A DNA stretch of 64,000 nt from Macrostomum lignano (GCA_002269645.1 NIVC01003244.1:62001-126000), one strand, 5' to 3'; positions 41,361 through 64,000 are shown, counted from the stretch's first letter. The notes: generated from the sequence alone by a model not told the origin. Numbers and translations: made by a program.

Positions 41361-42068
41361 ATCAATGGATAGGGGGATTGTTACACTTAGGCCCTATAAT
41401 GATGAATAATATGCTTGATCCCTGTAATTGCTCATCTGAACAGAAATAAAACTCACGAAGTCCGATGTCTCAAAGGTAAAAGCGCAGCTTCTTTCTCAGC
41501 AGTTTTACACACATTTTTCTGCCGCCTCGTCTTGCATTTATACCCATTCTGCATGCGGATGCTACGGAATCGAAAAAATGACGAAGTTCTAAGAATAGAT
41601 TTTTTTATTCATATTTAAAGGACGAAGATAGTTTTTTTGGTTATAATAGAGTAGCATCACAGATAAGAAATAAATAAAACTCAAGAGGACAGACATCCTT
41701 CAGCCTCTGCTCTATGCTCTGTCTGCAGTCTCTGTCTGCTTCTTAAAATTGTTCTCTTAGATCCGTGTTTCCATAGCCTGGTCGTAGTACGCTATTATTA
41801 GAGAATAAGAAAAGAGAGTTGAGACTGAGACAAGTCTCGATTGTAGCGGGCCACTGCGACGTGTTTAAAGTTCGTCTCGCCGGTGCTACAATTGCGAGGG
41901 CCGGCTCCAAAAAGTAATTATACTCATGAAGACTGAGAACTCTGTCAATACGAACTTAGCTTTCGGGTTATAGTAGAATGTTACTGTTCAAGAATAATGT
42001 AGTGATCCGCTAGTTTGGTGTTAGGCGCCCCCCTTTGTCAGCAGTTTCCCTCGCCCTCGCCCTCGCTC

Positions 42069-42303
42069 GCACGGGCATATTAAGCATGCCAGTGAAGTAT
42101 GAGACAGACCAGGCCTATGGGCTAAGGTCTGCGATGCTCCACGCCTGCCCCTATCTTCAGCAGGTAAAGGCTGGAGGGAGGTCTGCACCCTCTATTTGCC
42201 GCTGGCAGCCGCAGACCCCCCCCACGCTGTCTCGCAAGCCGACCCAGGGTACTCGTCCCCGCGTGTGTTCAAGGCAGACCCTAGGGCTGCCGGACAGACT
42301 GGG
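42069..42303 (+). ncRNA. HDV-like self-cleaving ribozyme fold at the 5' end of LINE copy A (partly degenerate)
   Basis: P1 GCACGGG / CGCGTGT (one mismatch); L3 TACTCGT at 42250-42256; P4 GGCAG/CTGCC; J4/2 CAGA with catalytic-position C42295; P2' CTGGG. One G is missing at the P2/P3 junction relative to copy B. Confidence 0.65.
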
Positions 42304-42552
42304 CTCCGGCGCTGGGGACCCATCCAGTGGCTTTGCCGAACTTGTGTATGCGGGTCTGGCTCGCCAGTCCGCAGGCCGTGGTACTGCTCAACGCACCCTC
42401 TAATACCTAAGGTGTTCGACCGTGCCGATGGCCGGGGAGTAGTCCGGTCGCAAGCGGTCCCTCTCCTGGTGTCGGGCCGGCCTACTGCCCGGTCAGGTGG
42501 AGCGGCCGGGTGGGTACCGCGCCCCTTCGAGGGTAGCCCACCAATCTTTATC

Positions 42553-44056
42553 ATGGCCTTCAAGCCGACTATGGATAATCAAGCTAATTCTAGGGACGGG
42601 GACCCTTCTAAACCCCAACCTCAGTCCGAAGGACCGGCCGGCCCTGCTGGCAGATCCCAACCGACTGATTCAACTGTGGCAAAGGAAGGACCGGCTGGCC
42701 TTCCAACCAGATCCAACCAGAGCTACCAAAACCAAAACACCCAAAGACCTGCCAGCTCTGCTGGTAGATCAAAGGGAACCGCGGGCTCTGAGCCTAAAGG
42801 ACCGGCCAAATCTGGCAGATCCGACGAAGCTCAGCGGGCTCGGCTCGAGCGCAAACGCGCTAAGCGACGCGCCAAAAGGCAGGCCAAGAAGGGAGCTGCG
42901 GGGACCAAAGCGGCGGCGTCCACCACGGACGCTGAAGCGACTGGCGTCCCAAGGCAACTAGACGGGCCGGCCGGTGGAAGCTCCGGTAGTTCGGCGGCGG
43001 CGCTCCCTGGAGATGCTGCTGCGGCTGCTGAGGCCGAAACCACGGCGCAACAAATGGCCACTGCCAACAAGGAGGTTTCTTCGGGAACTACCTTTGCGGC
43101 GAAGGCCAAGGCCAAAATCCCGGGAGTGATCATTCAAGGTCGCGACCAGGACTAGACCACTGATCAGCTTCAAAAAGTGTGTGGTGCTATTGACTCCTAT
43201 CTGATTGAGCTGACTGTCGAGGAGGGAATCTCCATCGGCATTGAGCGGATGGTGCTGCGAAGCACATTCGTTCTTACCGCTCCTAGCAGTGATGAGGACG
43301 CTCAGCAGCTGCTCCAGCGGCTGCCAACGGTCTCCTTGGATGTTGACCACGGCGGAGCCCTTTTTCTTCGCAAAGGCCAGCGTCCAAAGACAATACCCTA
43401 TGTGGTTTTTGTCCCTGCAAAAAGCACCGCAGCTGGACCAGACGTTTTTCGCCGGGTCCTACTGCGCCTGAATCCCGACCTCTCTGCTAGTGGACTGGTG
43501 TATCATCGTAATGTCCGCAGGGGGGAAACGGGCAAATTAATCGTCCTCGGCCTTTCCAACGCTTGGGCGAGTCGGTACCCTAACGGATCCTCTTTCCAGC
43601 TGGGTGCCCTCAAGCTCAAGATGCGCCGAGGAAAGTCTGCCAAAGGGAAAGCTTCTGCCAACCCCGGCATCTCCGGCAAGAGCGGGGTGCAGTCTAAGGC
43701 CCAAGGAAAGGCGCAAGCCGATCCCAAAGCCGGAGCTGCGTCTCGCCCCTCTGCTAGCAGCAGTTCGACGACCGCGGTGACGGCTCCGGCCAAGCCCCGG
43801 GAACCGAACCTGCCAGCCGGAGAAGGAGTTGAGGACGAGGCCGGGTCTTCGGAATCCGAGCTCTCCTCAGCCACCCTGGTGGGGTCTGAAGGCAAAGATG
43901 AGATGAGGAAGCTTCCTCCATCCTGTCATCGGAGCCCGAGGACTCTGCTGGGGGGCTGGTGGGGGTCAGGATGCCATGGACATCGACCAACTCCCATCTC
44001 CCAGTCAAGCCCCAACGGCCTGGGACGAGGACGATTTGCTGTCCAAGTCTCCTTGA
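42553..44056 (+). pseudogene. LINE A ORF1 (probable DUF4780-type), disrupted
   Basis: ATG at 42553, in-frame TAG at 43153-43155, frameshifts near 43900-43970. The core NPDLSASGLVYH..LIVLGL aligns with copy B HPDLDASGLVYH..VILGL. DUF4780 assignment is from recall of LOA ORF1s. Confidence 0.75.
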
Positions 44057-47000
44057 TGGCCTGGGGTTCTAGCCAGCTGACTAAGCTCCACGCTGCCAAA
44101 GGAGCGACACTCTGTCTGCAAATAAATTTAAAGCATTGCGTCAGTCATTCTGATGAAGATTTCTGAGGTGTAAAGGCCAGGCCTCATTCTGATCCAGGAG
44201 CCCTGGATGCGCAACGGTAAGTTGCCCAACATTCCTTCTGGCTACTCTGATTTTTATGTGTGTGGCCCGGGGAACAGCCGCCCTAGAGCGGCTATCCTCG
44301 CTGCCAGCCATCTCCAGGCTTGGCTGAGAACTGATCTCTCAGATGAAGACCTCTGCGTCATCCAATCTAATCATCTCTCTCCGCGGACGTGTCTCGTTGC
44401 TTCGATTATTTCAGGCGACAGAGACCCTGCACCTGAAAGTCTACTGCGCCTTGCGCAGTACTGCGAGTCCCAGAACGCTGAGCTGTGCTTAGGGGGGCGA
44501 CCTCAACGCGCACCACAAGCACTGGGGCAGCAAAGACACCAATACTAGAGGGGAGGAGCTTCTGGCCCTTATCTCTAACACAAACCTCATGCTCTGCAAC
44601 CGCGGTAGCACTCCTACCTTTAACAATGGCAGATGGACTGAGGTCCTCGATGCCACACTCGCTACCCCAAGACGCTTTGACAGAGTTGAGAAGTGAAGTC
44701 TGGTCTAAGGAGCCCTCCCTCCTCCCTGTCTGACTACTACTTTATCGCCTTTAAAATCGTGGACACTAAACTCCAGTCCTCGATCACTTGGATGCGTAAC
44801 ATCCGCAACACTGATTGGGCAGCCTATAAGGCTACCCTTGATCTGCACCTGCAGGAACTCACGGACTTACGTCCGATTGAGACCTGCGAGGATGTGGACT
44901 ATGTGGCTGAGACGCTGACAGGTTGCATTATTGCAGCCTATGAAGCGGCCTGCCCTGTCCGTGCCTACAAAGCCCTCTCCGTGCCTCGGCGCCGTGGTGG
45001 AACCCGGAGCTGGGGAAACTCAGACGGAAGGCCAAAAGCCTTCACCGGCGTACCATGAAGACCGGAAACCAGGAGGACATGGAACTTTTCCGACAAGCCT
45101 CCCACAACTTCAAATCTAAGTGCGCAAGGCCAAGGAATGTAAATGGCGCCAATTCTGCAATGAGTTGGATTAAGACAGACCTACTTCTAGGCTTGTCAAG
45201 GCCCTTACAATGGACAAAATATCCAAATTAGCCATGATCGGAAGAGAAGACCCTGAAGAAGTGATTCAGCATATGCTCAGCACATTCTTCCCGAGGGTAC
45301 CCACTGCTAGATCGGAACCCAACCATTCGATGGATGGAGCCACCCTAGCGGCGGGCATTATCTCTGAAGACTTAATCGCTCGTGCGGTCAGAACCTTCAA
45401 GCCCTTCAAATCTCCTGGACCTGATGGTATCTACCCTGTTCTTCTTCGTGAAGCAGCCAAGATACCCTCGTTCTTGAGACTTACCCGCAATCTCACGTGG
45501 GCCTCTATCCAGATGGGATACGTTCCCAAGTGCTGGACCGAAGCTCGGGTAGTCTTCATTCCCAAACCTGGGAAGGTGACTACCAGAGCGTCAAGGCCTT
45601 TAGGCCAATTAGCTTAACGTCAGCAATACTTAAGCTCACTGAGAGGCTTATTCTCTGGCGGCTGCTTTCATGCGAGCTGACAGCAATGCACCTCAGCAAT
45701 CACCAGCACGCCTTCCGTACCGGGAGGTCGACTGACAGCGCCCTGCATGCGATAGTCGAGAACATTGAACGGGCGGTAATGGATGACGGTTACGCCCTGG
45801 CTCTTTTTTTCGAAATTTTTGGCGCCTTCGACAACGTTATCTTTGAAGGGTTTCAAGGGCCCTTAAAAACCGCAAAGCTCACGCTACCCCCATACGGTGG
45901 ATCATGTACATGATCTCTAACCTTACGGTCACTGCCCAACTTCTTTGGCAAACTGCCTCCGCCAGAGTTTGTAAGGGCGGACCCCAAGGTGAAGTCCTCA
46001 CCCCGACGCTCTGGAACCTGGTCATGGACGCTCTTCTGGGCGACTCCCGACCTGATCCCGTCTTCAAAGTCGGGTATGCTGACGACGTCACTGCCATTGT
46101 GGCAGAGCCGTCCCCAGCACGCTCAGGGATCTGATGCAGAGCTTTATCCGCAAAGCAGAATCCTGGGCCAATGACAACGGTCTGGAACTCTCTGAGCCCA
46201 AAACTGTTGCCATTATGTTCACCAGCAGAATACGCTGGAACATACGACCTCTGCAGTTATACGGCAGAGATATTGCCTTCGCGCACCAGACCAGATGTCT
46301 CGGGGTCATACTTGACCACCGGCTCAACTGGTCCTTCCACGTGAAAGCAAAAGCCAAGCATGCCTCAGTCATCCTGGCCCAGCTCCGACGAGCACTTGGC
46401 ACTTCTTGGGGTCTTTCTCCAAAGCGGCTTTGGTGGATCTACACTTCCGACCTGCCATTACGTACCTGCCTCGGTTGTCTGGGTTGCGCTACCCAGGTCA
46501 AAAGCCATGCAGATTTGCTCAACACGATCCAGGACAGAGCGTGTAGGCTTATCTGCAACGCCACCAGGTCCACGCCCTTTGCCGGCATGGGGGCCTTCCT
46601 TAATCTACCGCCTCTTGACCTCTTCTCAGGGGTGAGGCGGCTAGAACGACGCGGCGTCTTAATTGATGCCGGTCAAATTCCTTTACATGAGAGCACCTGC
46701 TAAGCGGAACCTTGTCCCGCATAGCGATCTGTGCCTCAACTTCTCAACGAGTGTCAGGCCAATCGCGTCTTCACCGATGCATTGCCTCAACAACGCTCAA
46801 CCTGAGACAACGCTACTCCGTAGCTTTCGACTCGCGCGATACCATCAATGACCACTGGAACCATGGGGAGCTTCACTGCTACACCGATGGTTCTAAGAAG
46901 TCAGCCAAAACCGGTTTTGGTGTTGGAATCTTCCTGAACGGGAGGGTCATCGCAACCCACGCTCAGTACACTGGGGTCAACTCCAGTGTCTTCCAAAGTG

Positions 47001-47714
47001 AAGTTCTCGCCATCAGCTCCTGCATTTCAGAGCTTCTCACCACTGGCGTATCCGGTAAGAACATCATTTTCCATTCGGACAGCCAAGCTGCCTTGCACGC
47101 CATCAGTGGCTGTAGTCCCAGTTCTGCTACAGTGCTCGTATCCAACTCCTCAACATGTTGAGCTCCACCAACAAAATCACCCTTAAGTGGGTTCCGCGCA
47201 TGTGGGGATCCGAGGGAATGAGTTGGCTGACGCCTTAGCAAAAGTTGGCGCTCCGGCTCCTCTCTCGGTCCGAACCCCTTGTCCCGATTCCTGGCTGTGT
47301 CATCGACTCGCGCATCAACGCGTGGATCAGGACCCAGCACCGCTCGGCTTGGGCGAACTGCACTACCTGCAGGCAATCCAGAGGCGCTGTCCCTCAGCCC
47401 TCTCACCAGCCCGGAAGCTCCTCTTGCGCCTGTCGCGCAGAGACATCCGGGCTGCCACCATGACCCTCTCAAGTCACGGCTGCTTCTCTAGGCACAAGTA
47501 CCTGCAGGGCAACGCCACCAACGCCATCTATAGTTTCTGTAACTCAGGTGACGAAACCGCTGAGCATTTCGTCAGCATCTGTCCCGCCTTTACGCGAGCC
47601 AGACTCACTTACCTCGGGCCACACACAGGGCTGAACTCTTTTTTCTGCAGAGAGTACATAGCTGCTGGCGACACTGGGGGACCTCCTTGGGCGGCGCCAA
47701 CCCTTCGTCCATAG
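44056..47714 (+). pseudogene. LINE A ORF2 (APE-RT-RNase H-CCHC), multiply frameshifted
   Basis: Fragments CLQINLKH, SPGPDGIYP, VFIPKPGK, FRPISLTS, QHAFRTGRST, VGYADD, WVP(H)VGIRGNELAD and HFVSICPAF lie in different frames. Confidence 0.9.
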
Positions 47715-47827
47715 CGACGCGTCGGCCGTTCAGGGATTAGCGGAATGGGCGCTCGCGGGTTCCCTCTGTGTCCCCCCGGGACAGCCCTGCAGCTAAGTCA
47801 AGTAAGTCAAGCCCTCGCCCTCGCCCT

Positions 47828-50185: not shown

Positions 50186-53100
50186 GTATACTGATTATTT
50201 GACTGTTAATTTATTAATAAATTGTCCTGTTTGAACACCTACTGACCGCGGTAGTTGTTTTCTATTGCGTACCTTCTCAATGGCTATCGATTGAAGCATA
50301 AATTTTCTAACTAATGAGGTTCTGTTATTGCTAATGTGGCTAATCTTTTTTTGTTGTTGAAGTACTTTGTTAATATGAACTTAGCTCTCGAGTTACTAGA
50401 ATCTATGTTACTGTTCTAATCCACAACGCAAGCAATTATCACATCTATAAAGCGTGTGCCAAGTACATGTATTGAATAAGTGCCAAATATATGTCTAGAG
50501 TGGCAAAAGACAAGTGTGGAGCTTGGGTGTCGAGTGCTATTTTTTCTAATTTCTAATTAGTTTTAAATTTAAAGTACCAGCAGAATATGCTAATTGATTA
50601 AATTTGATGGTCTGATATGACATATTTAGGAATGTTCGATACCTTATGATTTGTACATATGCAGCTAAACATATAGAAACTGTGGACTGAGTGGTCGTGA
50701 TCACACAGCAAGATGGCTGGAAGTGCTTGTACAGATAATGTAACAAATAAAAACGCAGATTTCTTGGGTAAATTGTAGAGAGTACGAGCGTACATCAAAC
50801 TGATTAAAGCGAGCGGAATAACGTAGGAATTTATTTTTTCTGTAACACATTAACACAAATATAGCAATGATTTTTGACAAATTTTAATTCTTAGACAATA
50901 CAAAAAATGTATAGGGAAAATTTTAATATTACTGTAATAGTAATAGTTTTAATAGTACTTTTAATATTAGTACTCGTATTTCTCCGATGCTTTGCAATTA
51001 TATACCATCCCCATGCAGGGCCAAATTCAACCAAAAAAATTAAATGCGCATGCTAAGTACAGGCACAAACACGAAAGAGTTTAGCTATAACAAAATTATG
51101 ACCCATCAAAATTTGATCGTTTATCTGAATTGCATATAATTCATTGACAACATTGCTATAGCTATATATACTGTATATGTATTTGGCAACAAAAATATAC
51201 TATAGTACTTTCTTTATATTAACGTGTGCACAAAGTTTTCAGCTATTAGCTATAAAATGTTAGCGAAAAGTGAACAGAAAATAAAACTGACAAAGGAAAG
51301 TATATTTATTCAGTCGTAATACGCTCGTATATGCCAAGCACGCGATAATAAAAATAAAAATGTATGTTTTAAATAATTAGAGTAACAGTAACTGGTTAAA
51401 AAACCAAAGCTACTATCTATATTGGTAAGTAATCAAATTCTTTTTTCTTTTACGTTTTATTCGGATAGCTATAATCTTTACAAAATTTCCGGAACAAAAA
51501 AGTGACAATCTTTTAACGAATATGTATTTTAAACCAGTGCAACAGCAATTAAAGATACTATTATTACATGTATTTAAAATTAAGGACAAATACTTTGGTC
51601 CAAATATGCTTGAACAATGCAATAAGAAATGTTTCGAAAGAAGGTATAACATTATCAGAATTCAGAATTGCAAAAATACTATAACTTTAAAATCTGTAGG
51701 TCTAAATGATAAAAACTAATAAGTGCTGAAATGAGTTAAGAATTTAATTGATGTTTTAAACTAAACCACATACATGTACCATGGCATAATAACATTTTGC
51801 AGTACATATCGAATAAATTATTAATTAGCATAGTCAATTATATCGTTTGTGCGGTTTGCACACAGGCTCTAAATCTGCGTTCGCGGAGACCAACAACAAA
51901 CAGAACAATTATAATATAGACAGAAGATTAAATTTAATATGGTTAGACTTAACAAAATAAGCTAAAAGTTAAAGAAATTAATAATCTGTTTCTGGTGTCA
52001 ATAATAATTATAGAACAATTCAATTCAAGAATTAGATTAAAACAACAAAAATAATCAACGCATGTATCACACTACTACAAGTAGGAGGAGTGTGTCATTT
52101 TAATGAGAAAGCGGACTATTTCGAATTAAAAATAGCTTTTAAATATTAAGACAAACTAGTAACATGAGACTAAGAAAAAATAACCCCAAAAAACAAGAAA
52201 CGTTATAGAGAAGAAGCAAAGAGAGACTGAAGGATCAACAGCAGAGGAAGCTGACTATTGCTGTTCTCTGCACAGCTGCTGACACGTTGGATTGCATTTA
52301 ATATTCCGAAGGGCACAGTGGCCCAGTGGCATTTTGGTTGAGCTTTCGGCGCGCCTGCCTTCGCTATCTAATTTCCCATAGCTAGCTAAGCCAAGAGCCG
52401 GGCGCAATTCCCTGGGGCAATTGCTATAAGCCACTACCCTACATGTACATGTATAAGCCTTCGATGCTTGTACCGATGGATTATTCATGAGTAGCCGAAG
52501 CCCGTCCGCGGTCTCTTGCAAGCTCTATTTGCCCATCGTTCATTATAATCCCCTTGCTGAGCTGTGCGGCTATGCTGTGTAGCCAATCGCTAATCCTAAA
52601 GATTATAAATGTCTTCAACTAAATGTATCTTTATGTTTGACAAGATGACAACTGTCGGGTGTTTATATGTCAACCGAGTATAAATTTAAACAATTTCATG
52701 TTTTCGATTAGACATAAGAATGCTGTTAGGAGCAGTAGAGTGCAGACACAGGCTGGATCAGTACAGTACAGACTTGATCAGTACATTACAGACTGGATCA
52801 GTACATTACAGACTTGATCAGTACATTACAGACTGGAACAGTACGAGCGTACATTACAGACTGGAGCACAACAAAAATACAAAATCAGTACAATGAAAAC
52901 AGAAAAGTCTATAAAAGATCAGAACAGAACCTTACAGATCCAAACAGTATATAAACATGAATCATAAATATCAGGTCATAACAACACACGCGAGCAGCAT
53001 ATTAACAGACCAGAACAGAAACATTCGTGTAAGAAAAGACAAGAGACGAGCTTTGTCAGCACAGGCAAAACTCATGTTTAATCGAATTCACTATCTGCTT

Positions 53101-53189
53101 TTTTCTGCTCGTGCTCACGCATACTCAGATCGATAAGATGGGGGTAATCCAGCCATCCTCACTCAGCCTAAATAGTTGTTTCTTAGAAT

Positions 53190-56100
53190 TCATTTCTTCC
53201 GCAAATGATGCCACATGGCAACGGGTTTGCGCAGCGAGGTGACCATCTGCTGCCAGTGCGTCAGCTCGGCTCCGCCAGCCTGCGAGCCGATTATCACGTG
53301 ACCGATGCTGCTGAGCCGGCCGTCACTGCGCAATTCGGCCACGGTTAGGCGGAGCTGGACGGACTGGAGATGAAAGAGAGAGTAGAAGGTACTGTCTCCC
53401 TCTGTCTCTCCCCCCGTCTCTTCCTCCGTCTCTCCCTCCGTCTCTCCCTCCATCTCTCCCTCTGTCTCTCCCCCCGTCTCTCCCTCCGTCTCTCCCTCCG
53501 TCTCTCCCTCTGTCTCTCCCCCGTCTCTCCCTCCGTCTCTCCCTCCGTCTCTCCCTCTGTCTCTCCCTCTGTCTCTCCCTATGTCTCTCCTTCTGTCTCT
53601 CCCCCCGTCTCTCCCTCCGTCTCTCCCTCCGTCTCTCCCTCCGTCCCTCCCTCCGTCTCTCCCTCTGTCTCTTCATGTATCTCATTGTCTCTCCCTCTGT
53701 CTCTCCATGTCTCTCATTGTCTCTCCCTCTGTCTCTCCCTCTGCCTTTCCCTCTGTACGCTCATATTCTTCTCGGTATCTCCCCCTGTCTCTCCATGTCT
53801 CTCTATGTCTCCCCCTCTGTTTGTCCCTCTGTCTCTCCCTCTGTCTCTCCATGTCTCTCCCTCTGTCTCCCTATAAAATTATTTCAGCATAATAACCCAT
53901 AAATCAATTGTGCCGTGCGCTGTCTCAAGTCTGGTCCAATTTGCAGACACTTTATATTTTATAAACTCTAAAGCCGCTTAGCTAGTGTAATAGAGCTGAT
54001 TATGGTATATAATTTGGCTATTTAAATGGTAATTTTAAGGCCAACTGGAACAAATAAACATGTAATTGTAAAACAGTTCTCACCGACAGAGAGGCCTGTG
54101 ACACACTAAATATCATCGCCTCGTTGTAGGTGGGCTGGCTTTCGCTGCGCTTTACCGATGTCTTCTTTTTGGTTACTCGCTTGCCGCCCTGCAGAAGATG
54201 CACTTTTACCAGCACGTCTGCAATGGGTATTGAGTGCCAAATGCTTGTCCGCCTGACGAGGTTAAGGGCGGCAAATCAAAGGGATTCGAAGGGAATCTCG
54301 TGAGGGCGGCGGAACATCAAAGAGATTGGAGGGGAATCTCTTGAGGGGGGGGGCGGCACATCAGAGAGATTGGAGGGGAATCTCGTGAGGGCGGCGGCAC
54401 ATCAAAGGGATTGGGGGTTGAGAATCTCTGGAGGTCGGTGGCATATCGAAGGGATTAAAGAGGAATCTCTGGAGGGCGGCGGTACATCAAAGGAATTGGA
54501 GGGGAATCCCCGGAGGGCGGTGGTACATTAAAGGGATTGGAGGGGAATATCTGGAGGGCGGCGGTACATCAAAGGGATTCGAGGGGAATCTCTGGAGGGC
54601 GGCGGTACATCAAAGGGATTGGAGGGGAATCTCTGGAGGGCGGCGGTACATCAAAGGGATTCGAGGGGAATCTCTGGAGGGCGGCGGTACATCAAAGGGA
54701 TTGGAGGGGAATCACTGCAGGGCGTGGCACATCAAAGGGATTGCGATCTTTGGAAATAAATTTTATCGAGTTAATCTGCCTCCCTCCACTTGTAATATTT
54801 TATTCCTTGCCTTAGATGCAGTCTGAACTGTTAGCAATCGTGACAAATAATTAGCTGAATCATCGTATTGATTTAATGTACGTTCGCTCTCTATGTACAT
54901 CGCAGGCTTAACTTCAACTTGCATAAATAAAGCGATCACTGCCTCACGGGGCCTTCGTGTTTGTGGTGCTGCCAAATACCGCGTGTTACACACTCACCGC
55001 CAACCGACTGATCTTGGCGAGGCCACTTCAAGTTCTTTGCCTTCACAATGACCACGGTGAGTCGTTCGGCAGTTGGCAGGTAGCTGAGAGAGAACATCAG
55101 CTCGCCAAAGTCTGACGGTTTCTGCAATGTTGAGATCGAAAGCACGCGGCTGTTTTGATATTTTTATTGGGTCATTGGGGTTGGGGGGGGGGGGTAGCAG
55201 TTAAAGAAACAGCTGCTCACCTGGTCGAGTTCGCGCAGGTTGAGCCATAGACGAAGCGGTCGCTGCAGATCCACGTCAGCGAGCCTGATTTCAGTCTCGC
55301 CGATGTGCTTCTGCCTGGCGTACTTGTCAACGCTGAACATCTGCAGCTGCAGCGACTTCTGGGCCAGCTGGTGCGGCTCCAGGCTGTACAGGAACCGCTC
55401 TTTGAATACGGGATTGGGGTTCCGCTTGACAACCTGCGATGTTGAGGATATGTTGACACATTGGTTATAACCTGTCCCATACAACATTATACCTGTCCTA
55501 TGCAGATTGTAGCACCATCAATCCTCATGCGTTTTCGTAGAACTGGATTTTAACAATCCGTCTAGTCTAGTTTTCTATGGATCAAGGTCCCAAAGATCGA
55601 TCGCCTGAAGATAGTCTAGTTTATAGATCTAAACTCTAATATCGATGATCTAGTTCATAGATCTAGACTCTAATATCGATGATCTAGTTCATAGATCTAG
55701 ACTCTAATTATCTATCTGGTATATAGATCTAGACACTGATGATCTATTTAGTATATAGATCTAAACTAATGATTTATATAGTTTATAGATCTAGACTCTA
55801 ATGATCTAATGATCTATCTGATTTATAGATCTAGATTCTAATGATCTATTTAGTTTTCGTCAAGAGCCGCTCACCTTAGTCTGGGACTTCATGTTGGCCA
55901 CGTCGGGCACTACGGCCAGGCAGGCGAAGAAGTCCATGTCGCAGACTCCGGTGGCGTCGCTGGAGGCCAGATCCCGACCCTGGATGAGCGACACCACCAG
56001 CTCGGAGACGTCCCTGTCGTACTCAAGCCCCATCTCCACCTGACCGATTGGCGACACGTCCGGCTGCATGTCCATCACGGATGTGTCCGAGGCCAGCGAC

Positions 56101-56190
56101 TCGGCCGAGCCAACGCGGGGAAGGTTGTGTCCGGGCTCGTACTCGGAGCCTGCGGGCGCATGAACGGAGGGCGAACGAATCTTATTATTG
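53190..56190 (-). CDS. SYT12: Synaptotagmin-12-like protein, C2A and C2B exons (56190-55875, 55433-55221, 55121-54998, 54217-54084, 53363-53190); a probable upstream exon ends at 63880
   Basis: Phase-consistent GT-AG exons. GQVEMGLEYD, SLSYLPTAERLTVVIVKAKNL, NEAMIFSV, LTVAE..DGR..GHVIIG and THWQQM..LRKPVAMWH match recalled SYT12 motifs. Confidence 0.88.
53395..53870. repeat. 12-bp CT-rich minisatellite (CTCCCTCCGTCT) in a SYT12 intron
   Basis: Direct reading. Confidence 0.9.
54290..54740. repeat. 41-bp minisatellite (GAGGGCGGCGGTACATCAAAGGGATTGGAGGGGAATCTCTG)
   Basis: Direct reading. Confidence 0.9.
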
Positions 56191-56210
56191 CTGTTTAATA
56201 AGTTGATCAC

Positions 56211-56955
56211 AGTCGTCTTTTGGCGCGACTCTGACAGTCGTCTTTTGACGCCACTCTGACAGTCGTCTTTTGTCCCACTCTGACAGTCGTCTTTTGGCGC
56301 CACTCTGACAGTCATCTTTTGTCCCACTCTGACAGTCGTCTTTTGTCCCACTCTGACTGTCGTCTTTTGTCCCACTCTGACAGTCGTCTTTTGGCGCCAC
56401 TCTGACTGTCGTCTTTTGTCCCACTCTGACAGTCGTCTTTTGGCGCCACTCTGACTGTCGTCTTTTGTCCCACTCTGACAGTCGTCTTTTGACGCCACTC
56501 TGACAGTCGTCTTTTGTCCCACTCTGACAGTCGTCTTTTGGCGCCACTCTGACTGTCGTCTTTTGTCCCACTCTGACAGTCGTCTTTTGGCGCCACTCTG
56601 ACTGTCATCTTTTGTCCCACTCTGACAGTCGTCTTTTGGCGCCACTCTGACAGTCATCTTTTGTCCCACTCTGACTGTCGTCTTTTGTCCCACTCTGACA
56701 GTCATCTTTTGTCCCACTCTGACAGTCGTCTTTTGGCGCCACTCTGACTGTCGTCTTTTGGCGCCACTCTGACTGTCATCTTTTGTCCCACTCTGACAGT
56801 CGTCTTTTGGCGCCACTCTGACAGTCGTCTTTTGGCGCCACTCTGACAGTCATCTTTTGTCCCACTCTGACAGTCGTCTTTTGGCACCACTCTGACAGTT
56901 GTCTTTTGTCCCACTCTGACTGTCGTCTTTTGGCGCCACTCTGACAGTCGTCTTT
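56211..56955. repeat. 24/25-bp minisatellite (TCTGACAGTCGTCTTTTGTCCCAC / ..GGCGCCAC), left part
   Basis: Direct reading; resumes at 63056. Confidence 0.95.
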
Positions 56956-57194
56956 GCACGCGAAGGCGTATTCAGCATGCCAGTGAAGTATGAGACAGAC
57001 TAGGCCTACGAGCTAAGGTCTGCGATGCTTCACGCCTGCCCCTATCTTCAGCAGGTCAAGGCTGGTGGGAGGTCTGCACCCTCTATTTGCCTCTAGCAGC
57101 CGCAGACTCGCCCACGCTGTCTCGCAAGTCGACCCAGGGGTACCCGTCCCCGCGTGTGTTCAAGGCAGACCCTAGGGCTGCTGGACAGACTGGG
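56956..57194 (+). ncRNA. HDV-like (CPEB3-type) self-cleaving ribozyme at the 5' end of LINE copy B
   Basis: P1 GCACGCG 56956-62 / CGCGTGT 57151-57 with G1-U wobble; P2 CCCAG 57133-37 / CTGGG 57190-94; P3 GGG/CCC; L3 TACCCGT; P1.1 C-G57158; P4 TTC-AA-GGCAG / CTGCT-GGA; J4/2 CAGA with C57186. Confidence 0.8.
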
Positions 57195-57444
57195 CTCCGG
57201 CGCTGGGGACCCATCCAGTGGCTTCGGCCGAATTTGGGTATGCGGGTCTGGCCCGCCAGCCTGCAGGCCGTGGTGCTGCTTAACGTACCCTCTAATGCCT
57301 AAGGTGTTTGACCGTGCCGATGGGCTGGAAGGCCGGGGAGTAGTCCGGTCGCTAGCGGTCCTTTTTTCAAACCGGCTGGCTTGAGGTGTCGGCCAGTCGG
57401 GTACTCAACTCGCGTAACGAGGAGCCCTCCCCCGCTTTTCAGCT

Positions 57445-59278
57445 ATGGCCACTAACGCCAATTTTATCAATGAAACTGACCCGGTCGCCACTGGCCCACC
57501 GGGATCAGCCGCTCCGGTAGCTACCACTGGTAGCAACAACGCCCAACCTGGTCCAACCGGGCCAGCTGACGCTGCCGCCGAGTACCCTGGCCGCCAGTCT
57601 AGCCGACCGCGCACGGCCGAGTCCCGACGGTAGCGAAATATCCGCCGTAATCGTAAGCGGCAGGAGAAGCGGGCTGCTGTTGCGTCCGCGGAGAGCGGGC
57701 AAGCCGCGGTGAGGCTTTCGGGAGCCACCGCAGCGGGGAGGCCCTCTGGGGAGCCCAGTGGCGCGGCTGGGCCGTCAGAAACCGCCGTGTCCTCGGACTC
57801 TCAGGGGGGCAACCCTGCCGGCCTACCGCCTTCCAAGGACAAAGCGGCCCCGCTCAAGACCTCCGAGTCCTACGCCTCCAAGGTCAAGCAGCCGCTGCAA
57901 CCCGCCGTGATGATCCTCGGCGGGGATTTTGACCTGACGCCCGAGCAGCTCGACGTCGCGTGGCGCACCATCGACGAGGGCTTGCTCAACCTAACCCTGG
58001 AGGGCGTCTTCGTGGACATCGTCAAGTCCACCAAGGCGAACGGGTGCATCCTACTGTGGTGCAAATCCGAGGAGAGCACCCAGCTCCTGCGGGATCAGCT
58101 GCCCAAGTTCGACTGGCACAGCGACCTGGGCCAGCTGACCTTCGCCCTGGTGAGCGAGCGGCCGAAGACCATCCGCCATCGGATTTGGGTCCCGGCCGAC
58201 AGTGCGATCAAGTCCGGGGAGCAGCTGCGGCAGCTCCTGCTCAAGCGGCACCCGGATCTCGACGCCAGTGGTCTTGTGTACCACAGCACGGTCCGCAAGG
58301 GCACGACCGGGGCCACCGTCATCCTCGGCCTGACGGAGGGATGGGCCAAGCGGCTACCGCACGGCACAAACCTCCACCTTGGTCTCCATCAACTGACCAT
58401 CCTCCGCTGTGAGGAGGGAAAGGTGGAGACTAAGAACGACGGGAAGCGCGCCTCTCCCGGAGCTGGGGCTCAGGCTCCGCCGGCCAAGCGGCAGCAGCAA
58501 CCCGATCCCAAGCCTAACAAGGCTATTCGCGCTGCTGAGTCCGCCTCGCGCGGACGTAGACCCGCCCGCAGTAACCGGCGGTCCGGGCTAATCCAGCGCG
58601 CACTTGACGAAGCTCAGTCTCTGAGACTTCACCTCGAGCAGACTCGTGCTGCTCGCAAAAACACCGAAAGCCAGCCGAGGGAACTGGACGACGGCATGGC
58701 TCAGCTTTCCAACTGGTGGGATTACCACCAGGAGGACGCTGCCGGCCGAGCTCAGACTCCCGACGGCGGGGCGCAAGGCGAAGGCAGCAGCCGTACCCCA
58801 GTCGCTGGGGGGGGGGCGGCATACATGCGCAACAGTCGGCCGAGTCGGCCGATCCGGCCGACCGATTTGGTGGCCAACCAAGGAAGTCGCAAAAATGCCA
58901 ACCCGAAAAAACACCGAGTAGTAGTACTAAGTAGCTGACGAGGCATTTTGGCTTTATAAGACAGTCATAGTTACTCCTGCCGTTTACCCAAAGTTGCATT
59001 AATTTTGCTTTCGGGTTTTTTTACATGTAAGTCGCATTTTTGGCCAAAAACTACGTCGCATTTTTGTTAAAACTAAGTCGCATGGCCGACCGAAATTTGG
59101 AGGTTGCGCATGTATGGGGGGCGGTGTAGCGCGGCTAGGTGACTCACCTGCCGTGGGCGCCGTGTCCGCCTCCGCGGCGGCTGGTGAGGCGGCTGGGCCT
59201 GAGCCAATGGAAACTGGCGACTCAACTCTCACCGATGAGGCTGAGAATGAGTTGCTTTTCTCCTCCCCTGGACAGTAG
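57445..59278 (+). pseudogene. LINE B ORF1 (probable DUF4780-type), disrupted
   Basis: ATG at 57445, in-frame TAG at 57631-57633, frame continues through ORF 57709-58938. The C-terminus is interrupted by a MITE; the natural end ..ENELLFSSPGQ* is at 59278. Confidence 0.8.
58820..59116. mobile_element. 297-bp MITE nested in LINE B ORF1
   Basis: Perfect 14-bp TIRs CATACATGCGCAAC / GTTGCGCATGTATG; 8-bp TSD GGGGGCGG at 58812-58819 and 59117-59124. Confidence 0.92.
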
Positions 59279-59280
59279 AC

Positions 59281-62200
59281 ATGACCGTCTCCCAGGGCAT
59301 CCACTGCTTGCAGGTCAACCTGCAGCACAGCATTGCAGCACACTGACCAATACGCGCCAGGGATTATCCTTATCCAGGAACCTTGGACGCTAAGGGGCAG
59401 GCCCCAACATGTCCCCACCGGCTACCAGTGTTTAACCGCTGGCACCCGGGAGGGTACCTGACACCAAGATCCTGCATCATGGTGTCCAGTTCTATTAACG
59501 CATGGCTCAGATCGGACCTGTCCACCAGGGACATCTGCGTCATCCAATTTGAAGACATACTCCCTGGGAGGACTACCCTCATCGCCTCGGTTTACCTACC
59601 GGGCGACGGCGAGATGATCCCAGGGGAGCTTGTCACATTGGTCGAGCTCTGCTCCACCAGAAATTATGAGCTGCTTGTGGCAGGCGATATCAACGCCCAC
59701 CATACCCACTGGGGCAGTTCTGATATTAACCAGAGAGGTGAAGACTTCCTGGTTTATATTGCTACTACAACCCTTGAGTTCTGTAACTCGGGTAGTACCC
59801 CTACCTTCAATAACGGACGCCGATCGGAGGTGCTGGATGCCACCCTCGCCACGCCCAGGCTCTTCCTGAGCACTAGGGAGTGGCGGGTGCTTCCTGAGGC
59901 GTCCCTCTCCGATCACAAGTTCATCTCTTTCACGCTGGCCAGCGCTCGAAACGCAGGCCAGCTTTACTGGAAACGGAATGCTAGGAATACTGACTGGACC
60001 GCCTTCAGGCTTGCCCTGGAGGAGACCTATCGTTGCACTAGCGCTCCAGTCTCCATCAACACCTGCGAGGAAGCAGATGATTTTGCGGCCGCACTTACGG
60101 ACTCGCTCACTGCTGCCTTCGAAGCCTCATGCCCACTAAAGGCATATAAAGGCAAACAGTCGGCCCCATGGTGGAACCCGCAGCTTGGCGACCTCCGTCG
60201 CAGAGCCAAAAGGCTTCACCGCAGGGCCCAAAAAACTAAAAACCCGGCCGACCAAACCGCCTACCTGAACTCTATCCACGAGTTCAAGAGGCAGGTTAGG
60301 AACGCCAAAACCAACAAGTGGCGCGAATACTGTGAGGAACTTGAGGGCTCCCGCCCCACCTCCAGAATTGTTAAAGCCCTCACCCTGGACAAAATGTCCA
60401 AACTCTCCTCAGTCAAGAGAGCCGACGGCTCGCTCACTGAGAACCCAGGAGAAACACTGGAAGCGATGCTAACAGCGTTTTTGCCGAACGAGCCAGCCAG
60501 GCCCGACCCCCCTGACCACTCAGTGGGCGGTCACGTACTGACTGACTCAATCATCACGGAGGACCGCGTTACTAAAGCAGTCTCCTCCTTCAAACCCTTC
60601 AAATCCCCAGGACCGGACGGCGTTGTGCCAGCCTTCCTGCGGTAGGCGGTGAAATGCACCGGTTTCCTGCGGAACCTTTGCCGGCTTCTGAAAGCTTGCA
60701 TTGCTCTCGGCTTTGTTCCGAAACCCTGGACCGAGGCCAAGGTGGTTTTTATCCCCAAGCCCGGCCGACCGGACTACCGGCCCATTAAATCCTTCAGACC
60801 AATTAGCCTCACCTCCTCACTGGTGAAGCTGTTAGAGAGACTGGTGCTCTGGCGCCTCCTCTCTGTGGAACTGAAGAACAAGCCGCTCAATGAGAACCAG
60901 CACGCCTTTCGGGCAGGCAGGTCCACGGAGAGCGCGCTTCATGTCTTGGTCGACGTGCTGGAGAAAGCCGTTCTTGGCAATGGCTACGCTCTCGCTGTCT
61001 TCATCGACATTGTTGGAGCCTTCGATAGTGTCCTCTTTGAGGCTTTCGACAGAGCTCTACGTGCTAGAGGAACCCACTCGCACCTCACCCGGTGGATCAT
61101 GTATATGATCAGCCACAGTACTGCCACCGCACACCTGCTGGGCCACCAACGGACGGTAACCGTCTGCAAAGGCAACCCCCAGGGCGGTGTCCTCTTTCCA
61201 GTCCTCTGGAACATGGTCATCGATGAGCTCCTCCAGGACAGCCATCTTGACCCCATTCTTAAGGTCGGTTACGCCGATGATGTCACAGCCGTGGCATCCG
61301 GTCCGTCACCTGAAACCCTTAGGGACCTTCTGCAAAACTTTATTCGCTCTGCTGAACAATGGGCGGACAGGTGCGGCCTCAGGCTCTCTGAGACCAAAAC
61401 TGTCGCGATCATATTCACCAGCAGGGTTAACTGGCGTATTCGCCCACTAAAGCTTTACGGGGTGGAAATCCCATCCTGCAAGCAAGCCAAGTGTCTCGGC
61501 GTTACGCTGGACCACCGGCTGAGCTGGTCCACCCACGTCCAGGCCAAAACCAAAAAAGCCCTCGCGATTCTTGCGCAGCTGCGCAGAGCCGTCGGCACCA
61601 CCTGGGGCCTCACCCCAAAACGGCTCTGGTGGATCTATACCGCAATGGTCCGACCGGCCGTCACTTACGCCGGCCTGGTCTGGACCAGCGCCTTGCAGAT
61701 TAAAACCTTCCACGAAGCCCTCAAAAAGGTGCAGGGACGCGCGTGCCGCATGATCGTGAATGCCCCGCTCTCTGCTCCCTTTGACGGCCTCAACGCCTTT
61801 CTTTGCCTCCCGCCTCTGGACATTTTTGTCCGTCGCGAGGCTGCTAAAACCACCCGCCGGCTCATCGAGGCTGGCGTTAGCTTCAAGCCACAAAGAGCGA
61901 TGGCGAAGCGCAAGCTCCTGCCGCACTCTGACCTGAGCCTTAAAGTTCTGGAGGAGAGTGGGAATGCGGCTGTCCTTTCGGACGCTGAGTCGCGCTCCCT
62001 CAATCTCTACCAACGCTTCAAGGTCACTATCCCCTCTAGGGAGAACGCCAACGACAGCTGGGCCCCTCTGGAGGTTCACTGCTTTACTGACGGATCCTCC
62101 AAAGACGATCTATCCGGCTTTGGAGTCTGTATCCTTATCAATGGCCGCGTGATCGCTACTCACGCCCAACACACTGGCAGACTCTCCAGCGTCTTCCAAA

Positions 62201-62943
62201 ACGAAGTCTTTGCCATCAGCTCCTGTGCAGCTGAGCTCCACTGCAGGGAGTTCAAGGACAGAAGAATCTTCTTCCACTCTGACAGCCAGGCCGATTTGCA
62301 GGCCCTGTGTCACACCACTACGAACTCCCGAACAGTCCGCGACTGTATCGGGCAGCTCAACAAGCTGGCTCGGAGGAACACCGTCCGGCTTACGTGGATC
62401 CCAGGACACGCCGGCTTCAAAGGTAACGAGCTCGCCGACTCCCTCGCTAAGGCAGGCTGTTCCGGCTCGCCCCTTGGCCCCGTGCCCCTGGCCCCCATCC
62501 CCGCCACTGTCATTAATCGTCAGATTAACGACTGGGCGGACATCCTGCACTTGCGCAGATGGGATGGTATCTCCAACTGCCGCCAATCCCGTGCGGCAGT
62601 GCCCAATCCGTCCCTCAAGCTGCGGAGAATCCTTTTGAACCAAAATCGAAAAGATATCCGCGCTCTCACTATGACCTTCACAGGTCACGGTTGCTTTGCC
62701 AGGCACTGTTTCCTCCGAAGTGCCCGCCGGAGCGAACTCTGCCCTTTCTGCAACCTCGAGAACGAAGACGCCAAGCACTTCGTCTGCTACTGCCCGGCCT
62801 TCAACCGAGACCGGCTCAAACACCTCGGGCCCAACCCGTCCCTGAACATCCCACAGCTCATCCGGTTCCTCCAGGCCACCAAGCGAGCCTCCGTCTTCCC
62901 CACCGAAGACAACGCTGCAGACAGGACTGGCAGACCTCCCTGA
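59281..62943 (+). pseudogene. LINE B ORF2 (APE-RT-RNase H-CCHC), nearly intact
   Basis: QVNLQH and IQEPW lie in a compensating frameshift pair (~59345-59460); GDINAHH, SDHK; one in-frame TAG at 60643-60645; PQGGVL, YADD, FTDGS, WIPGHAGFKGNELAD, CPFC..HFVCYC. Confidence 0.92.
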
Positions 62944-63055
62944 CCGGCCCCGCGCCCTAGCCTATGCGGGTCTTTCAGGGATTAGCGGAATGGGCGACGC
63001 TCGCCTCCCCGCTGCGTCTTCGGACCGCCCTGCAGCTAAGTCAAGTAAGTCAAAA

Positions 63056-63595
63056 GACAGTCGTCTTTTGTCCCACTCTGACAGTCGTCTTTTGTCCCAC
63101 TCTGACAGTCATCTTTTGTCCCACTCTGACTGTCGTCTTTTGTCCCACTCTGACAGTCATCTTTTGTCCCACTCTGACTGTCGTCTTTTGTCCCACTCTG
63201 ACAGTCATCTTTTGTCCCACTCTGACAGTCATCTTTTGACGCCACTCTGACAGTCGTCTTTTGGCGCCACTCTGACAGTCATCTTTTGTCCCACTCTGAC
63301 AGTCGTATTTTGGCGCCACTCTGACAGTCGTCTTTTGACGCCACTCTGACAGTCGTCTTTTGTCCCACTCTGACAGTCGTATTTTGACGCCACTCTGACA
63401 GTCATCTTTTGACGCCACTCTGACAGTCGTCTTTTGTCCCACTCTGACAGTCGTCTTTTGACGCCACTTTGACAGTCGTCATTTGGCGCCACTCTCACAC
63501 ACGTCTTTTGGCGCCACTCTGACACATGTCTTTTGGCGCCACTCTGACACACGTCTTTTGGCGCCACTCTGACACACGTCTTTTGGCGCCACTCG
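63056..63595. repeat. 24/25-bp minisatellite, right part (split by LINE B)
   Basis: Same units as 56211-56955. Confidence 0.95.
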
Positions 63596-64000
63596 ATTTT
63601 TGGCGCCTCCCTCATTATCTCTCTACTGCGTCTCTGCCTCCCTTGGCGCTTTAACCCTTACTGACACTAACAAAAGAAAACGGTTCGGATAGTACGGCGC
63701 TTTTATTGACATTCAATTTGGCGCCATTTTTGGCATTTAATTCGGCGCCATTGTTGACATTTAATGTAACGCCATAGCTGACATCTAGTTTGGCGCTATT
63801 TTTGAAATTCTATTTGGCGTCATTGCTGACACTAATTTCTGCCGTATGTGACCCTTATCCCAGGTCCCGAATGACTTACCGGTGGTGTCTCCGGGGCTGT
63901 GACGCCCTGGCCCGGTGTCGCTGTCCTCAACGGCATCGTCTCGGAATTCGCGCCGCGAGAAGCTGCCACCGGCAGAGGCGCCCTGGCGCCCGATTGGCGC

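What the first reader, a model, noticed from the sequence alone, without database searches (positions are those of the whole stretch)
56943..57194. HDV-like self-cleaving ribozyme defines the exact 5' end of a LOA-like LINE
Seen: all HDV-family elements in the correct order and spacing. P1 is 7 bp with a G1-U wobble; P2 5 bp; P3 3 bp; 7-nt L3 U-A-C-C-C-G-U (CPEB3 has UUCACGU); G for a single-pair P1.1; P4; J4/2 C-A-G-A. G1 (56956) is the first base after the 13-bp TSD, as expected if the template RNA was generated by self-scission. Known: HDV-like ribozymes process R2, R4, R6, SART, Baggins and RTE 5' ends (Ruminski et al. 2011; arthropods, nematodes, chordates). Inference: a new family in another lineage, with an atypical L3 second base (A) and a very long J1/2 that strict descriptors would likely miss.
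Basis: partly seen in the sequence, partly recalled or inferred. Interest (0 to 1): 0.88.

Follow-up and report, generated by a model that had tools for sequence, protein, structure and literature searches.

The report
HDV-like ribozyme heading a flatworm LINE
The first 239 bases of a dead jumping gene (a LINE retrotransposon, probably from a Macrostomum flatworm) fold into the hepatitis-delta-type self-cutting RNA shape, which would trim the element's RNA to its exact first base. This trick is already known in other LINEs, so it is a new example, not a new principle.

Summary
At 56956-57194 (+) every part of an HDV-like double pseudoknot is present in the right order. G56956 is the first base after a 13-bp target-site duplication, inside a 24/25-bp satellite.

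The motif alone is not rare. My descriptor hits about once per 34 kb of unrelated DNA and three more times in this window. Two other lines of evidence carry the case:

- **5' ends.** P1 starts at the first base of the element in E1. In a 59%-identical (ORF2 protein) relative, the Logan contig L001 begins at the homologous G.
- **Covariation.** Between E1 and L001, 12 of 34 paired bases differ, yet 16 of 17 pairs hold. Five pairs changed on both sides: two in P1, two in the P1.1 pseudoknot, one in P2. Randomisation gives P about 1e-4.

The 170-nt J1/2 is a structured domain with covariation of its own.

Limits: only two independent lineages could be compared. Rfam finds nothing. L001's J4/2 is atypical. 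Cleavage is untested, and E1 is a dead copy.

HDV-like ribozymes at LINE 5' ends and very long J1/2 loops are already published (R2, R4, Dong, Baggins, RTE, L1Tc). This is therefore a new member of a known kind. Confidence 0.75; interest 0.45.

The parts
56943..56955 (+). 5' copy of the 13-bp target-site duplication GACAGTCGTCTTT, the last bases of the satellite before the element
   Evidence: Identical to 63056-63068; joining the flanks restores a perfect 24-bp satellite unit
56956..56962 (+). P1 5' strand GCACGCG. Predicted cleavage is 5' of G56956, the first base of element E1
   Evidence: Pairs 7/7 with 57151-57157. This is the only complementary site, in two overlapping registers, within 750 nt. 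L001 pairs GCCUGC with GCAGGC, with two pairs changed on both sides
56963..57132 (+). J1/2: a 170-nt structured peripheral domain. It holds five hairpins, including the highly conserved hairpin A at 56983-57033, and a weaker closing helix 56975-56980 / 57124-57129
   Evidence: RNAalifold consensus of 45 pairs; 94.8% of cells paired; 7 pairs changed on both sides against 0-2 in slid registers
57133..57137 (+). P2 5' strand CCCAG
   Evidence: Pairs with 57190-57194. L001 has CUCAG(A)/(U)CUGAG, with one C-G to U-A double change
57138..57150 (+). P3 (GGG/CCC) enclosing the 7-nt L3 UACCCGU. L3 positions 2 and 3 (A57142, C57143) form P1.1
   Evidence: P3 is invariant in E1, E2 and L001. L3 keeps U1, C5, G6 and U7 in all three; E2 differs only at the unpaired position 4
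57151..57157 (+). P1 3' strand CGCGUGU, directly after P3
57158..57159 (+). J1/4 bases G and U that form P1.1 with L3 C57143 and A57142
   Evidence: L001 has A195 and G196 pairing with L3 U181 and C180, so both pairs changed on both sides
57160..57185 (+). P4 hairpin (GCAG-A-CC / GG-CUGC plus outer pairs)
   Evidence: Forms in the minimum-free-energy fold. L001 has a different 10-bp P4 in the same place. The E2 change U57182 to C turns a G.U pair into G-C
57186..57189 (+). J4/2 CAGA; C57186 is the candidate catalytic cytosine
   Evidence: Read from the sequence. L001 has CUGC, with a C at the same offset of 4 nt before the P2 3' strand
57190..57194 (+). P2 3' strand CUGGG; end of the ribozyme
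56956..63055 (+). Element E1: a 6.1-kb non-LTR retrotransposon. The 5'UTR runs to 57444. ORF1 is 57445-58938 with an in-frame stop. ORF2 (APE-RT-RNase H) is about 59305-62943 with a frameshift and a stop. The tail reads ...CTGCAGCTAAGTCAAGTAAGTCAAAA
63056..63068 (+). 3' copy of the target-site duplication
42069..42305 (+). Homologous ribozyme region of the second, more decayed element E2 (42069-47811). P1 is damaged by a 4-nt deletion, P2 is cut to 4 bp, and L3 reads UACUCGU. Five extra bases (42064-42068) lie between the 16-bp TSD and G1

Best explanation
The first 239 nt of this LINE family encode an HDV-like self-cleaving ribozyme. It is a nested double pseudoknot (P1, P1.1, P2, P3, P4) carrying a 170-nt structured insertion in J1/2.

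When the element is transcribed as part of a longer RNA, or from its own 5' region, the fold forms. C57186 in J4/2, together with Mg2+ held by L3, would catalyse scission 5' of G56956. The element RNA then begins exactly at G1 with a 5'-OH. That RNA is the template for target-primed reverse transcription, so full-length insertions start at G1.

Shown here:
- the anatomy of the fold;
- the 5' ends at G1;
- compensatory evolution of P1, P1.1 and P2.

Inferred:
- cleavage itself;
- the catalytic role of C57186;
- any role of the J1/2 domain in bringing P1 and P2 together.

The E1 copy is coding-dead, but its ribozyme core is intact. The E2 ribozyme is probably impaired.
For: 1. All helices and loops are present in canonical order at the stated coordinates.
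2. P1 begins at the first base after the TSD in E1. In L001, whose ORF2 protein is 59% identical, the contig begins at the homologous G, and my descriptor independently places P1 at its position 1. None of 3000 shuffles put P1 at position 1.
3. Between E1 and L001, 12 of 34 paired nucleotides differ, yet 16 of 17 pairs are kept. Five pairs changed on both sides: two in P1, two in P1.1, one in P2. Randomisation gives P about 1e-4, and slid registers give only 3-10 of 17 pairs.
4. The P1.1 covariation is specific to the HDV double pseudoknot.
5. L3 keeps U1, C5, G6 and U7, and P3 is an invariant GGG/CCC. E2 differs in L3 only at the unpaired position 4.
6. J1/2 is a structured domain with covariation of its own. 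This fits published peripheral J1/2 domains (PMC4908430) and P1 strands up to more than 700 nt apart in R2 (PMC3774820).
7. The five extra bases at E2's 5' junction fit the variable junctions reported when cleavage is at the element's own 5' end (PMC3774820).
Against: - No experimental cleavage data exist.
- Only two independent lineages could be compared (E1/E2 against L001), and I built the structural alignment by hand.
- Rfam gives no hit, even at E<=10 on the 86-nt core.
- The descriptor matches background DNA about once per 34 kb.
- L001's J4/2 reads CUGC, lacks the usual adenines, and could be absorbed into an extended P4.
- The whole 400-nt 5'UTR is conserved between E1 and E2, not just the ribozyme. 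Conservation alone therefore does not single out the ribozyme.
- A more distant family (L125) keeps both P1 strands as a simple internal hairpin, with L3 shortened and no P4, J4/2 or P2 3' strand. The helix can evidently persist without a catalytic core.
- More distant relatives show no HDV-like motif at all.
Confidence: 0.75

Rival explanations
1. The region is a structured 5'UTR without catalysis. The 5' end at G1 is the start site of an internal promoter. The G1-G7 / 57151-57157 helix merely closes a large RNA domain that serves translation, RNP assembly or promoter function.
For: - The whole 5'UTR (element positions 10-406) is 90% identical between E1 and E2, not just the ribozyme.
- J1/2 has its own conserved hairpins.
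- L125 retains the P1 helix as a plain hairpin without a catalytic core.
- A downstream block (57298-57324) is conserved even in families with about 36% ORF2 identity.
- Rfam finds nothing.
Against: - It does not predict the two pseudoknots. P2 pairs across P3, P1' and P4, and P1.1 pairs L3 with the two bases after P1'. Both covary between E1 and L001.
- It does not explain the retained U..CG signature in a 7-nt L3 on a 3-bp GC P3, or a C four bases before the P2 3' strand in both lineages.
- Promoter and ribozyme can coexist, as in L1Tc Pr77/L1TcRz (PMC3383444), so this rival is not exclusive.
Confidence: 0.15
2. The match is a chance fit to a permissive motif. The reader found a complement to the element's first 7 bases somewhere in the 5'UTR and built an HDV drawing around it.
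For: - A long-J1/2 descriptor hits 27 cores in 0.91 Mb of control DNA and three other places in this window.
- About 4% of shuffled 5'UTRs match somewhere.
- The E1 fold is no more stable than its shuffles, z = 0.04.
Against: - None of 3000 shuffles have P1 at position 1.
- The same architecture recurs at position 1 of L001, which is 62% identical in this region, with 5 double compensatory changes and 16 of 17 pairs kept; P about 1e-4.
- The complement of the first 7 bases lies exactly against the P3 hairpin in both lineages.
Confidence: 0.05
3. The ribozyme is ancestral but now extinct. The family once used an HDV-like ribozyme, but the copies seen here are relics that no longer cleave, and other features now define the 5' end.
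For: - E1 and E2 are coding-dead.
- E2's P1 has a G-G mismatch after a 4-nt deletion, and its P2 is shorter.
- L125 looks like a decayed remnant lying behind tandem repeats of about 125 nt.
- L001's J4/2 is atypical.
Against: - The E1 core has no visible lesion: 17 of 17 pairs, and L3 and C57186 are intact.
- L001 has intact ORF1 and ORF2 and keeps the fold through compensatory change. That implies selection on the structure until recently.
Confidence: 0.05

Closest known systems
HDV-like ribozymes at the 5' ends of non-LTR retrotransposons that cleave at the element's own first base (R4, Dong, Baggins, L1Tc; Ruminski et al. 2011 from my own knowledge; Eickbush et al. 2013, PMC3774820; Weinberg et al. 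2019, PMC6765202)
   Same: A double-pseudoknot fold whose P1 starts at the element's first nucleotide. It releases the element RNA from a longer transcript. 5' junctions are variable (E2's five extra bases). The L3 core is close to CPEB3-type UUCACGU.
   Different: The host is a flatworm (probably Macrostomum) and the element is an APE-RT-RNase H LINE of unresolved clade. It matches no Rfam model. J1/2 is 170 nt and strongly structured. P1.1 uses A-U/C-G in this window and C-G/U-A in the relative, instead of two C-G pairs.
R2 ribozymes with long J1/2 loops (honeybee over 700 nt; planarian Schmidtea R2 included in the survey), PMC3774820
   Same: The two P1 strands are separated by hundreds of nucleotides. 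P1 is 6-7 bp with mismatches tolerated at the top, P4 is variable, and J1/4 is 0-2 nt.
   Different: Most R2 ribozymes take their P1 5' strand from 28S rRNA upstream of the element. Here P1 lies wholly inside the element, and the insertion site is not specific: a satellite for E1 and a CCCTCG repeat for E2.
drz-Agam-2-1 and other large HDV-like ribozymes with a P1.2 peripheral domain in J1/2 (Webb et al. 2016, PMC4908430)
   Same: A stable structure inside J1/2 can hold the distal ends of P1 and P2 together. Here a multi-hairpin domain has a closing helix at 56975-56980 / 57124-57129.
   Different: The domain here is larger, with five hairpins. It contains a roughly 50-nt hairpin that is more conserved than the catalytic helices, which hints at a function of its own. 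Its closing helix is only weakly supported in L001.
L1Tc Pr77 / L1TcRz dual system of Trypanosoma cruzi (PMC3383444, PMC3185411)
   Same: The same 5'-terminal segment could serve as an internal promoter at the DNA level and as an HDV-like ribozyme at the RNA level. That would explain conservation of the whole 5' module.
   Different: L1TcRz is compact at 77 nt. No promoter activity has been tested here.

Membership tests
HDV-like self-cleaving ribozymes | Nested double-pseudoknot order: P1 - J1/2 - P2 - P3 - L3 - P3' - P1' - P1.1 - P4 - J4/2 - P2' | tested here: met
   All segments are found in this order in E1 (56956-57194) and in L001 (1-237) by an explicit descriptor. Pairs are listed.
HDV-like self-cleaving ribozymes | Cleavage site at the first nucleotide of P1 (G1, usually G.U or G-C); P1 of 6-7 bp directly 3' of P3 | tested here: met
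   E1 has G1.U with 7 bp. L001 has G1-C with 6 bp. P1' abuts P3' in both. The cleavage itself was not tested.
HDV-like self-cleaving ribozymes | P1.1 mini-helix between L3 positions 2-3 and the 1-2 bases following P1' | tested here: met
   E1 has C57143-G57158 and A57142-U57159. L001 has U181-A195 and C180-G196. Both pairs changed on both sides.
HDV-like self-cleaving ribozymes | Short GC-rich P3 (3 bp) capped by a 7-8 nt L3 with a conserved U...C-G. The G forms a reverse wobble with the U (PMC3774820) | tested here: met
   P3 is GGG/CCC. L3 is UACCCGU in E1, UACUCGU in E2 and UCUCCGU in L001, so U1, C5 and G6 are invariant.
HDV-like self-cleaving ribozymes | Catalytic cytosine at the start of J4/2, a few nucleotides before the P2 3' strand | tested here: inconclusive
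   E1 and E2 have CAGA (C57186), which is canonical-looking. L001 has CUGC with a C at the same -4 offset. However, it lacks the usual adenines, and these bases could instead extend P4.
HDV-like self-cleaving ribozymes | Base pairs supported by covariation among relatives | tested here: met
   16 of 17 pairs kept with 12 of 34 bases changed, and 5 double changes; P about 1e-4. The comparison rests on only two independent lineages and a hand-made structural alignment.
HDV-like self-cleaving ribozymes | Mg2+-dependent self-scission giving a 2',3'-cyclic phosphate and a 5'-OH | not testable with these tools
   Needs in vitro transcription and cleavage assays.
HDV-like self-cleaving ribozymes | Match to a curated covariance model (Rfam HDV-like, CPEB3 and drz families) | tested here: not met
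   There were 0 hits at gathering score in the window and in 11 related loci. There were 0 HDV-family hits at E<=10 on the 1-kb region and on the 86-nt core. This is not a defining feature. These models carry little shared sequence, cannot model pseudoknots, and do not allow a 170-nt J1/2.
Ribozyme-terminated non-LTR retrotransposons | Full-length copies begin at the predicted cleavage site | tested here: met
   E1: G1 follows the TSD. L001: the contig begins at G1. E2: G1 is preceded by 5 non-templated bases after a 16-bp TSD. That is only three 5' ends.
   Pfam finds Exo_endo_phos_2, RVT_1 and RNase_H in ORF2. Relatives' ORF1 carries DUF4780. This architecture is shared by the I, LOA, Tad, Ingi and related clades (my own knowledge). 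No reference set was available for a tree.

The most novel reading that the evidence does not exclude
The 170-nt J1/2 insert may be more than a passive spacer. It would be a separate functional RNA or DNA module nested inside the ribozyme, for example a binding site for the element's proteins, an internal promoter as in L1Tc Pr77, or a regulator of cleavage. Its roughly 50-nt hairpin (56983-57033) is more conserved than the catalytic helices. The whole ribozyme-bearing 5'UTR would then move as a cassette between LINE families. E1 and E2 share 90% of the 5'UTR but only about 50% of ORF2 protein and 37% of ORF1 protein.
Probability: 0.25. Interest if true: 0.65.

Novelty: new member of a known kind. 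Interest (0 to 1): 0.45.

Why it matters
If it cleaves, the finding would:

- add a free-living flatworm and an APE-RT-RNase H LINE family to the elements that set their RNA 5' end with an HDV-type ribozyme;
- supply a natural example of P1.1 built from A-U and C-G pairs in interchangeable positions;
- offer a large, conserved J1/2 domain for studying how peripheral structure controls this ribozyme.

It also shows that curated covariance models miss such ribozymes, so their frequency in LINEs is probably underestimated. It does not change the known principle.

Tried and rejected
1. **Rfam.** I searched the whole window, the 1-kb region, the 86-nt core and 11 related loci. There was no HDV-family hit, only a meaningless 5.7-bit IRES match.
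2. **Metagenome scan.** I used the 17-mer GCTAAGGTCTNCGATGC from the conserved J1/2 hairpin. It returned 120 stretches, all chance matches by BLAST. A 41-nt pattern found nothing in genome contigs or viral contigs.
3. **Protein searches for more copies.** These used an ORF1 profile and an APE-domain profile and gave almost nothing useful. In the ORF1 search my E-value cut-off was too strict.
4. **More distant relatives** (L002, L003, L004, L125-L133; 27-46% ORF2 identity). No convincing HDV-like motif lies at their 5' regions. L125 has only a decayed remnant.
5. **Covariance model of the core.** I abandoned it because MAFFT misaligned P3/L3/P4 and alignments cannot be edited. Pair counts were done by script instead.
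6. **Satellite origin of G56956.** I considered that it might belong to the satellite and rejected this: 49 of 50 units have TTTTG.
7. **Other self-cleaving classes** (hammerhead, twister). No Rfam hit.

Full report
**What is in the window.** Positions 56956-63055 (+) hold a 6.1-kb non-LTR retrotransposon, E1.

- The 5'UTR is 489 nt.
- ORF1 (57445-58938) has one in-frame stop.
- ORF2 carries APE, RT and RNase H domains (Pfam Exo_endo_phos_2, RVT_1, RNase_H). It has a frameshift near 59315-59440 and a stop at 60646-60648. E1 is therefore a dead copy.
- It sits in a 24/25-bp satellite (56209-56955 and 63056-63594).
- The 13-mer GACAGTCGTCTTT flanks it on both sides, and joining the flanks restores one perfect satellite unit.
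- In a periodic array, a 13-bp duplication and an 11/12-bp deletion look the same. Either way the satellite ends at T56955. 49 of 50 units read TTTTG, so G56956 belongs to the element.
- The closest named proteins are from Macrostomum lignano (73% identity over two thirds of the query). The window is probably from a macrostomid flatworm.

- P1: 56956-56962 with 57151-57157 (7 bp, G1.U).
- J1/2: 170 nt.
- P2: 57133-57137 with 57190-57194.
- P3: GGG/CCC around the 7-nt L3 UACCCGU (57141-57147).
- P4: a hairpin within 57160-57185.
- J4/2: CAGA, with C57186.

**Is the motif more than chance?** On its own, no.

- A descriptor allowing J1/2 up to 400 nt matches about 4% of dinucleotide shuffles of the 5' region.
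- A fuller version adds P1.1, a C in J4/2 and a foldable P4. It still hits 27 cores in 0.91 Mb of unrelated control DNA and three places on the window's minus strand.
- The E1 fold is no more stable than its shuffles (z = 0.04).
- Rfam finds nothing, even at E<=10 on the 86-nt core.

The position is what is improbable. P1 starts at the exact first base of the element, which happened in 0 of 3000 shuffles. The only complement of the first 7 bases within 750 nt lies directly against the P3 hairpin.

**Relatives.** Three are informative.

- **E2 (42069-47811), in the same window.** Its 5'UTR is 90% identical to E1 over element positions 10-406. Its ORF2 is only about 50% identical in protein and its ORF1 37%. 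E2's L3 differs only at the unpaired position 4. A U-to-C change in P4 turns a G.U pair into G-C. A 4-nt deletion creates a mismatch in P1, and P2 loses one pair. After a 16-bp TSD, E2 has five extra bases before G1. This fits the variable junctions reported for elements whose ribozyme cleaves at their own 5' end (PMC3774820).
- **L001, a Logan contig from sample ERR14788467.** It has intact ORF1 and ORF2, and its ORF2 protein is 59% identical to E1. The contig begins at the base homologous to G56956, and its 5'UTR aligns with E1 at about 62% identity. The descriptor independently places an HDV-like fold with P1 at its position 1.
- **L125, a more distant family (about 36% ORF2 identity).** It keeps both P1 strands (GCACGCG and CGCGUGU) as a simple internal hairpin. 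L3 is cut to 5 nt, and P4, J4/2 and the P2 3' strand are missing. The hairpin lies behind three tandem repeats of about 125 nt. I read this as a decayed remnant. Other distant relatives show nothing.

**Covariation.** I anchored the comparison on the invariant P3 hairpin and on nucleotide 1, then compared the 17 core pairs of E1 with L001.

- 12 of the 34 paired bases differ, yet 16 of 17 pairs remain standard.
- Five pairs changed on both sides:
  - P1 position 3: A-U to C-G.
  - P1 position 4: C-G to U-A.
  - P2 position 2: C-G to U-A.
  - Both P1.1 pairs: C57143-G57158 becomes U-A, and A57142-U57159 becomes C-G.
- The only loss is the top pair of P1, a position where mismatches are common in R2 ribozymes (PMC3774820).
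- Random substitution of 12 of the 34 bases reaches this result with P about 1e-4. Slid registers give 3-10 of 17 pairs.
- The P1.1 result matters most, because that two-base pseudoknot is specific to the HDV fold. It also explains the 'atypical' A in L3, which pairs with the U that follows G57158.
- Limits: there are only two independent lineages, and the alignment is hand-made.

**The weak point.** L001's J4/2 is CUGC. It has a C at the same offset as C57186 (4 nt before the P2 3' strand), but it lacks the usual adenines. These bases could instead extend P4.

**The long J1/2.** It is not a loose spacer. RNAalifold on E1, E2 and L001 gives five hairpins plus a closing helix, 45 pairs in all. 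94.8% of cells are paired, and 7 pairs changed on both sides against 0-2 in slid registers. Hairpin A (56983-57033) is nearly invariant and more conserved than the catalytic helices.

Published work already covers such cases. The two P1 strands lie 23 to over 700 nt apart in R2 ribozymes (PMC3774820). Structured J1/2 domains speed cleavage by holding P1 and P2 together (PMC4908430).

**Mechanism.** The most likely reading (0.75) is a self-cleaving HDV-like ribozyme that cuts 5' of G56956 in a longer transcript. [quoted passage not shown] Anatomy, 5' ends and compensatory evolution are shown here; catalysis is inferred.

The main rival (0.15) is a non-catalytic structured 5'UTR whose 5' end is a transcription start. 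It fits the conservation of the whole UTR and the L125 hairpin, but it does not predict the covarying P1.1 and P2 pseudoknots. The two are not exclusive, as the L1Tc Pr77/L1TcRz dual system shows (PMC3383444). Chance, and an extinct ribozyme, get 0.05 each.

**Comparison with what is known.** HDV-like ribozymes at LINE 5' ends are established for R2, R4, Dong, Baggins, RTE and L1Tc. A planarian R2 is included in the published survey (PMC3774820, PMC6765202, PMC3185411).

I found no paper on ribozymes in Macrostomum, nor on this element family. In Schistosoma, LINE-associated ribozymes are twister variants (PMC8501958).

The finding is therefore a new member of a known kind. The label 'LOA-like' is unverified; only the domain architecture is shown.

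**Verdict.** Novelty is modest, and interest is 0.45. The points worth following up are the conserved J1/2 module and the apparent exchange of the whole 5'UTR between LINE families.

Noticed in passing
window 42064-47811 (+), compared with 56956-63055: A second, more decayed LINE (E2) shares 90% nucleotide identity with E1 over the 5'UTR (element positions 10-406) and 83% over the last 80 nt. Its ORF2 is only about 50% identical in protein and its ORF1 37%. This suggests that UTR modules, including the ribozyme, are exchanged between LINE families, for example by template switching.
   Followed up: partly
window 62968-63055; 47725-47811; L001 5885-5965: The 3'UTR is conserved in E1, E2 and L001: CAGGGRTTAGCGGAATGGGCG ... 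CCCTGCAGCTAAGTCAA, followed by a short (TAAGTCAAG)-type tail in place of poly(A). It is probably the 3' recognition element for the reverse transcriptase.
   Followed up: no
window 57298-57324; L125 about 640-670; L133 about 1670-1700: The block CCTAAGGTGTTTGACCGTGCCGATGGG, downstream of the ribozyme in the 5'UTR, is conserved in a LINE family with only about 36% ORF2 identity (L125) and more loosely in L133. It may be another functional 5'UTR element. Its function is unknown.
   Followed up: partly
L125 581-624 and 233-520: A distant relative keeps both P1 strands identical to E1 (GCACGCG and CGCGTGT) as a short internal hairpin. L3 is deleted to 5 nt and there is no P4, J4/2 or P2 3' strand. 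Three tandem GC-rich repeats of about 125 nt lie upstream. This may be a ribozyme made redundant by a repeat-type promoter.
   Followed up: partly
window 56983-57033: A roughly 50-nt hairpin inside J1/2 (GTGAAGTATGAGA..GAC.AGGCC...GCTAAGGTCT.CGATGC..CAC) is nearly invariant between E1, E2 and L001. It is more conserved than the catalytic helices, and its two variable pairs changed on both sides.
   Followed up: partly
window 52748-56955 and 63056-63838: The region around E1 is a patchwork of tandem repeats: a 20-mer at 52748-52844, a 12-mer (TCTCCCTCTGTC) at 53395-53869, a 41-mer at 54267-54743, a 34/62-mer at 55615-55856, the 24/25-mer satellite that hosts E1, and a related 24-mer at 63706-63838.
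   Followed up: no
window, within 4001-8000: A run of 410 N, which is an assembly gap.
   Followed up: no
L127 about 125-140; L130 about 183-200: More distant LINE relatives share the short motif CCCAGGGGGAAGG near their 5' regions. It resembles E1's GACCCAGGGG (the P2/P3 5' strands). No HDV-like fold could be built around it.
   Followed up: partly
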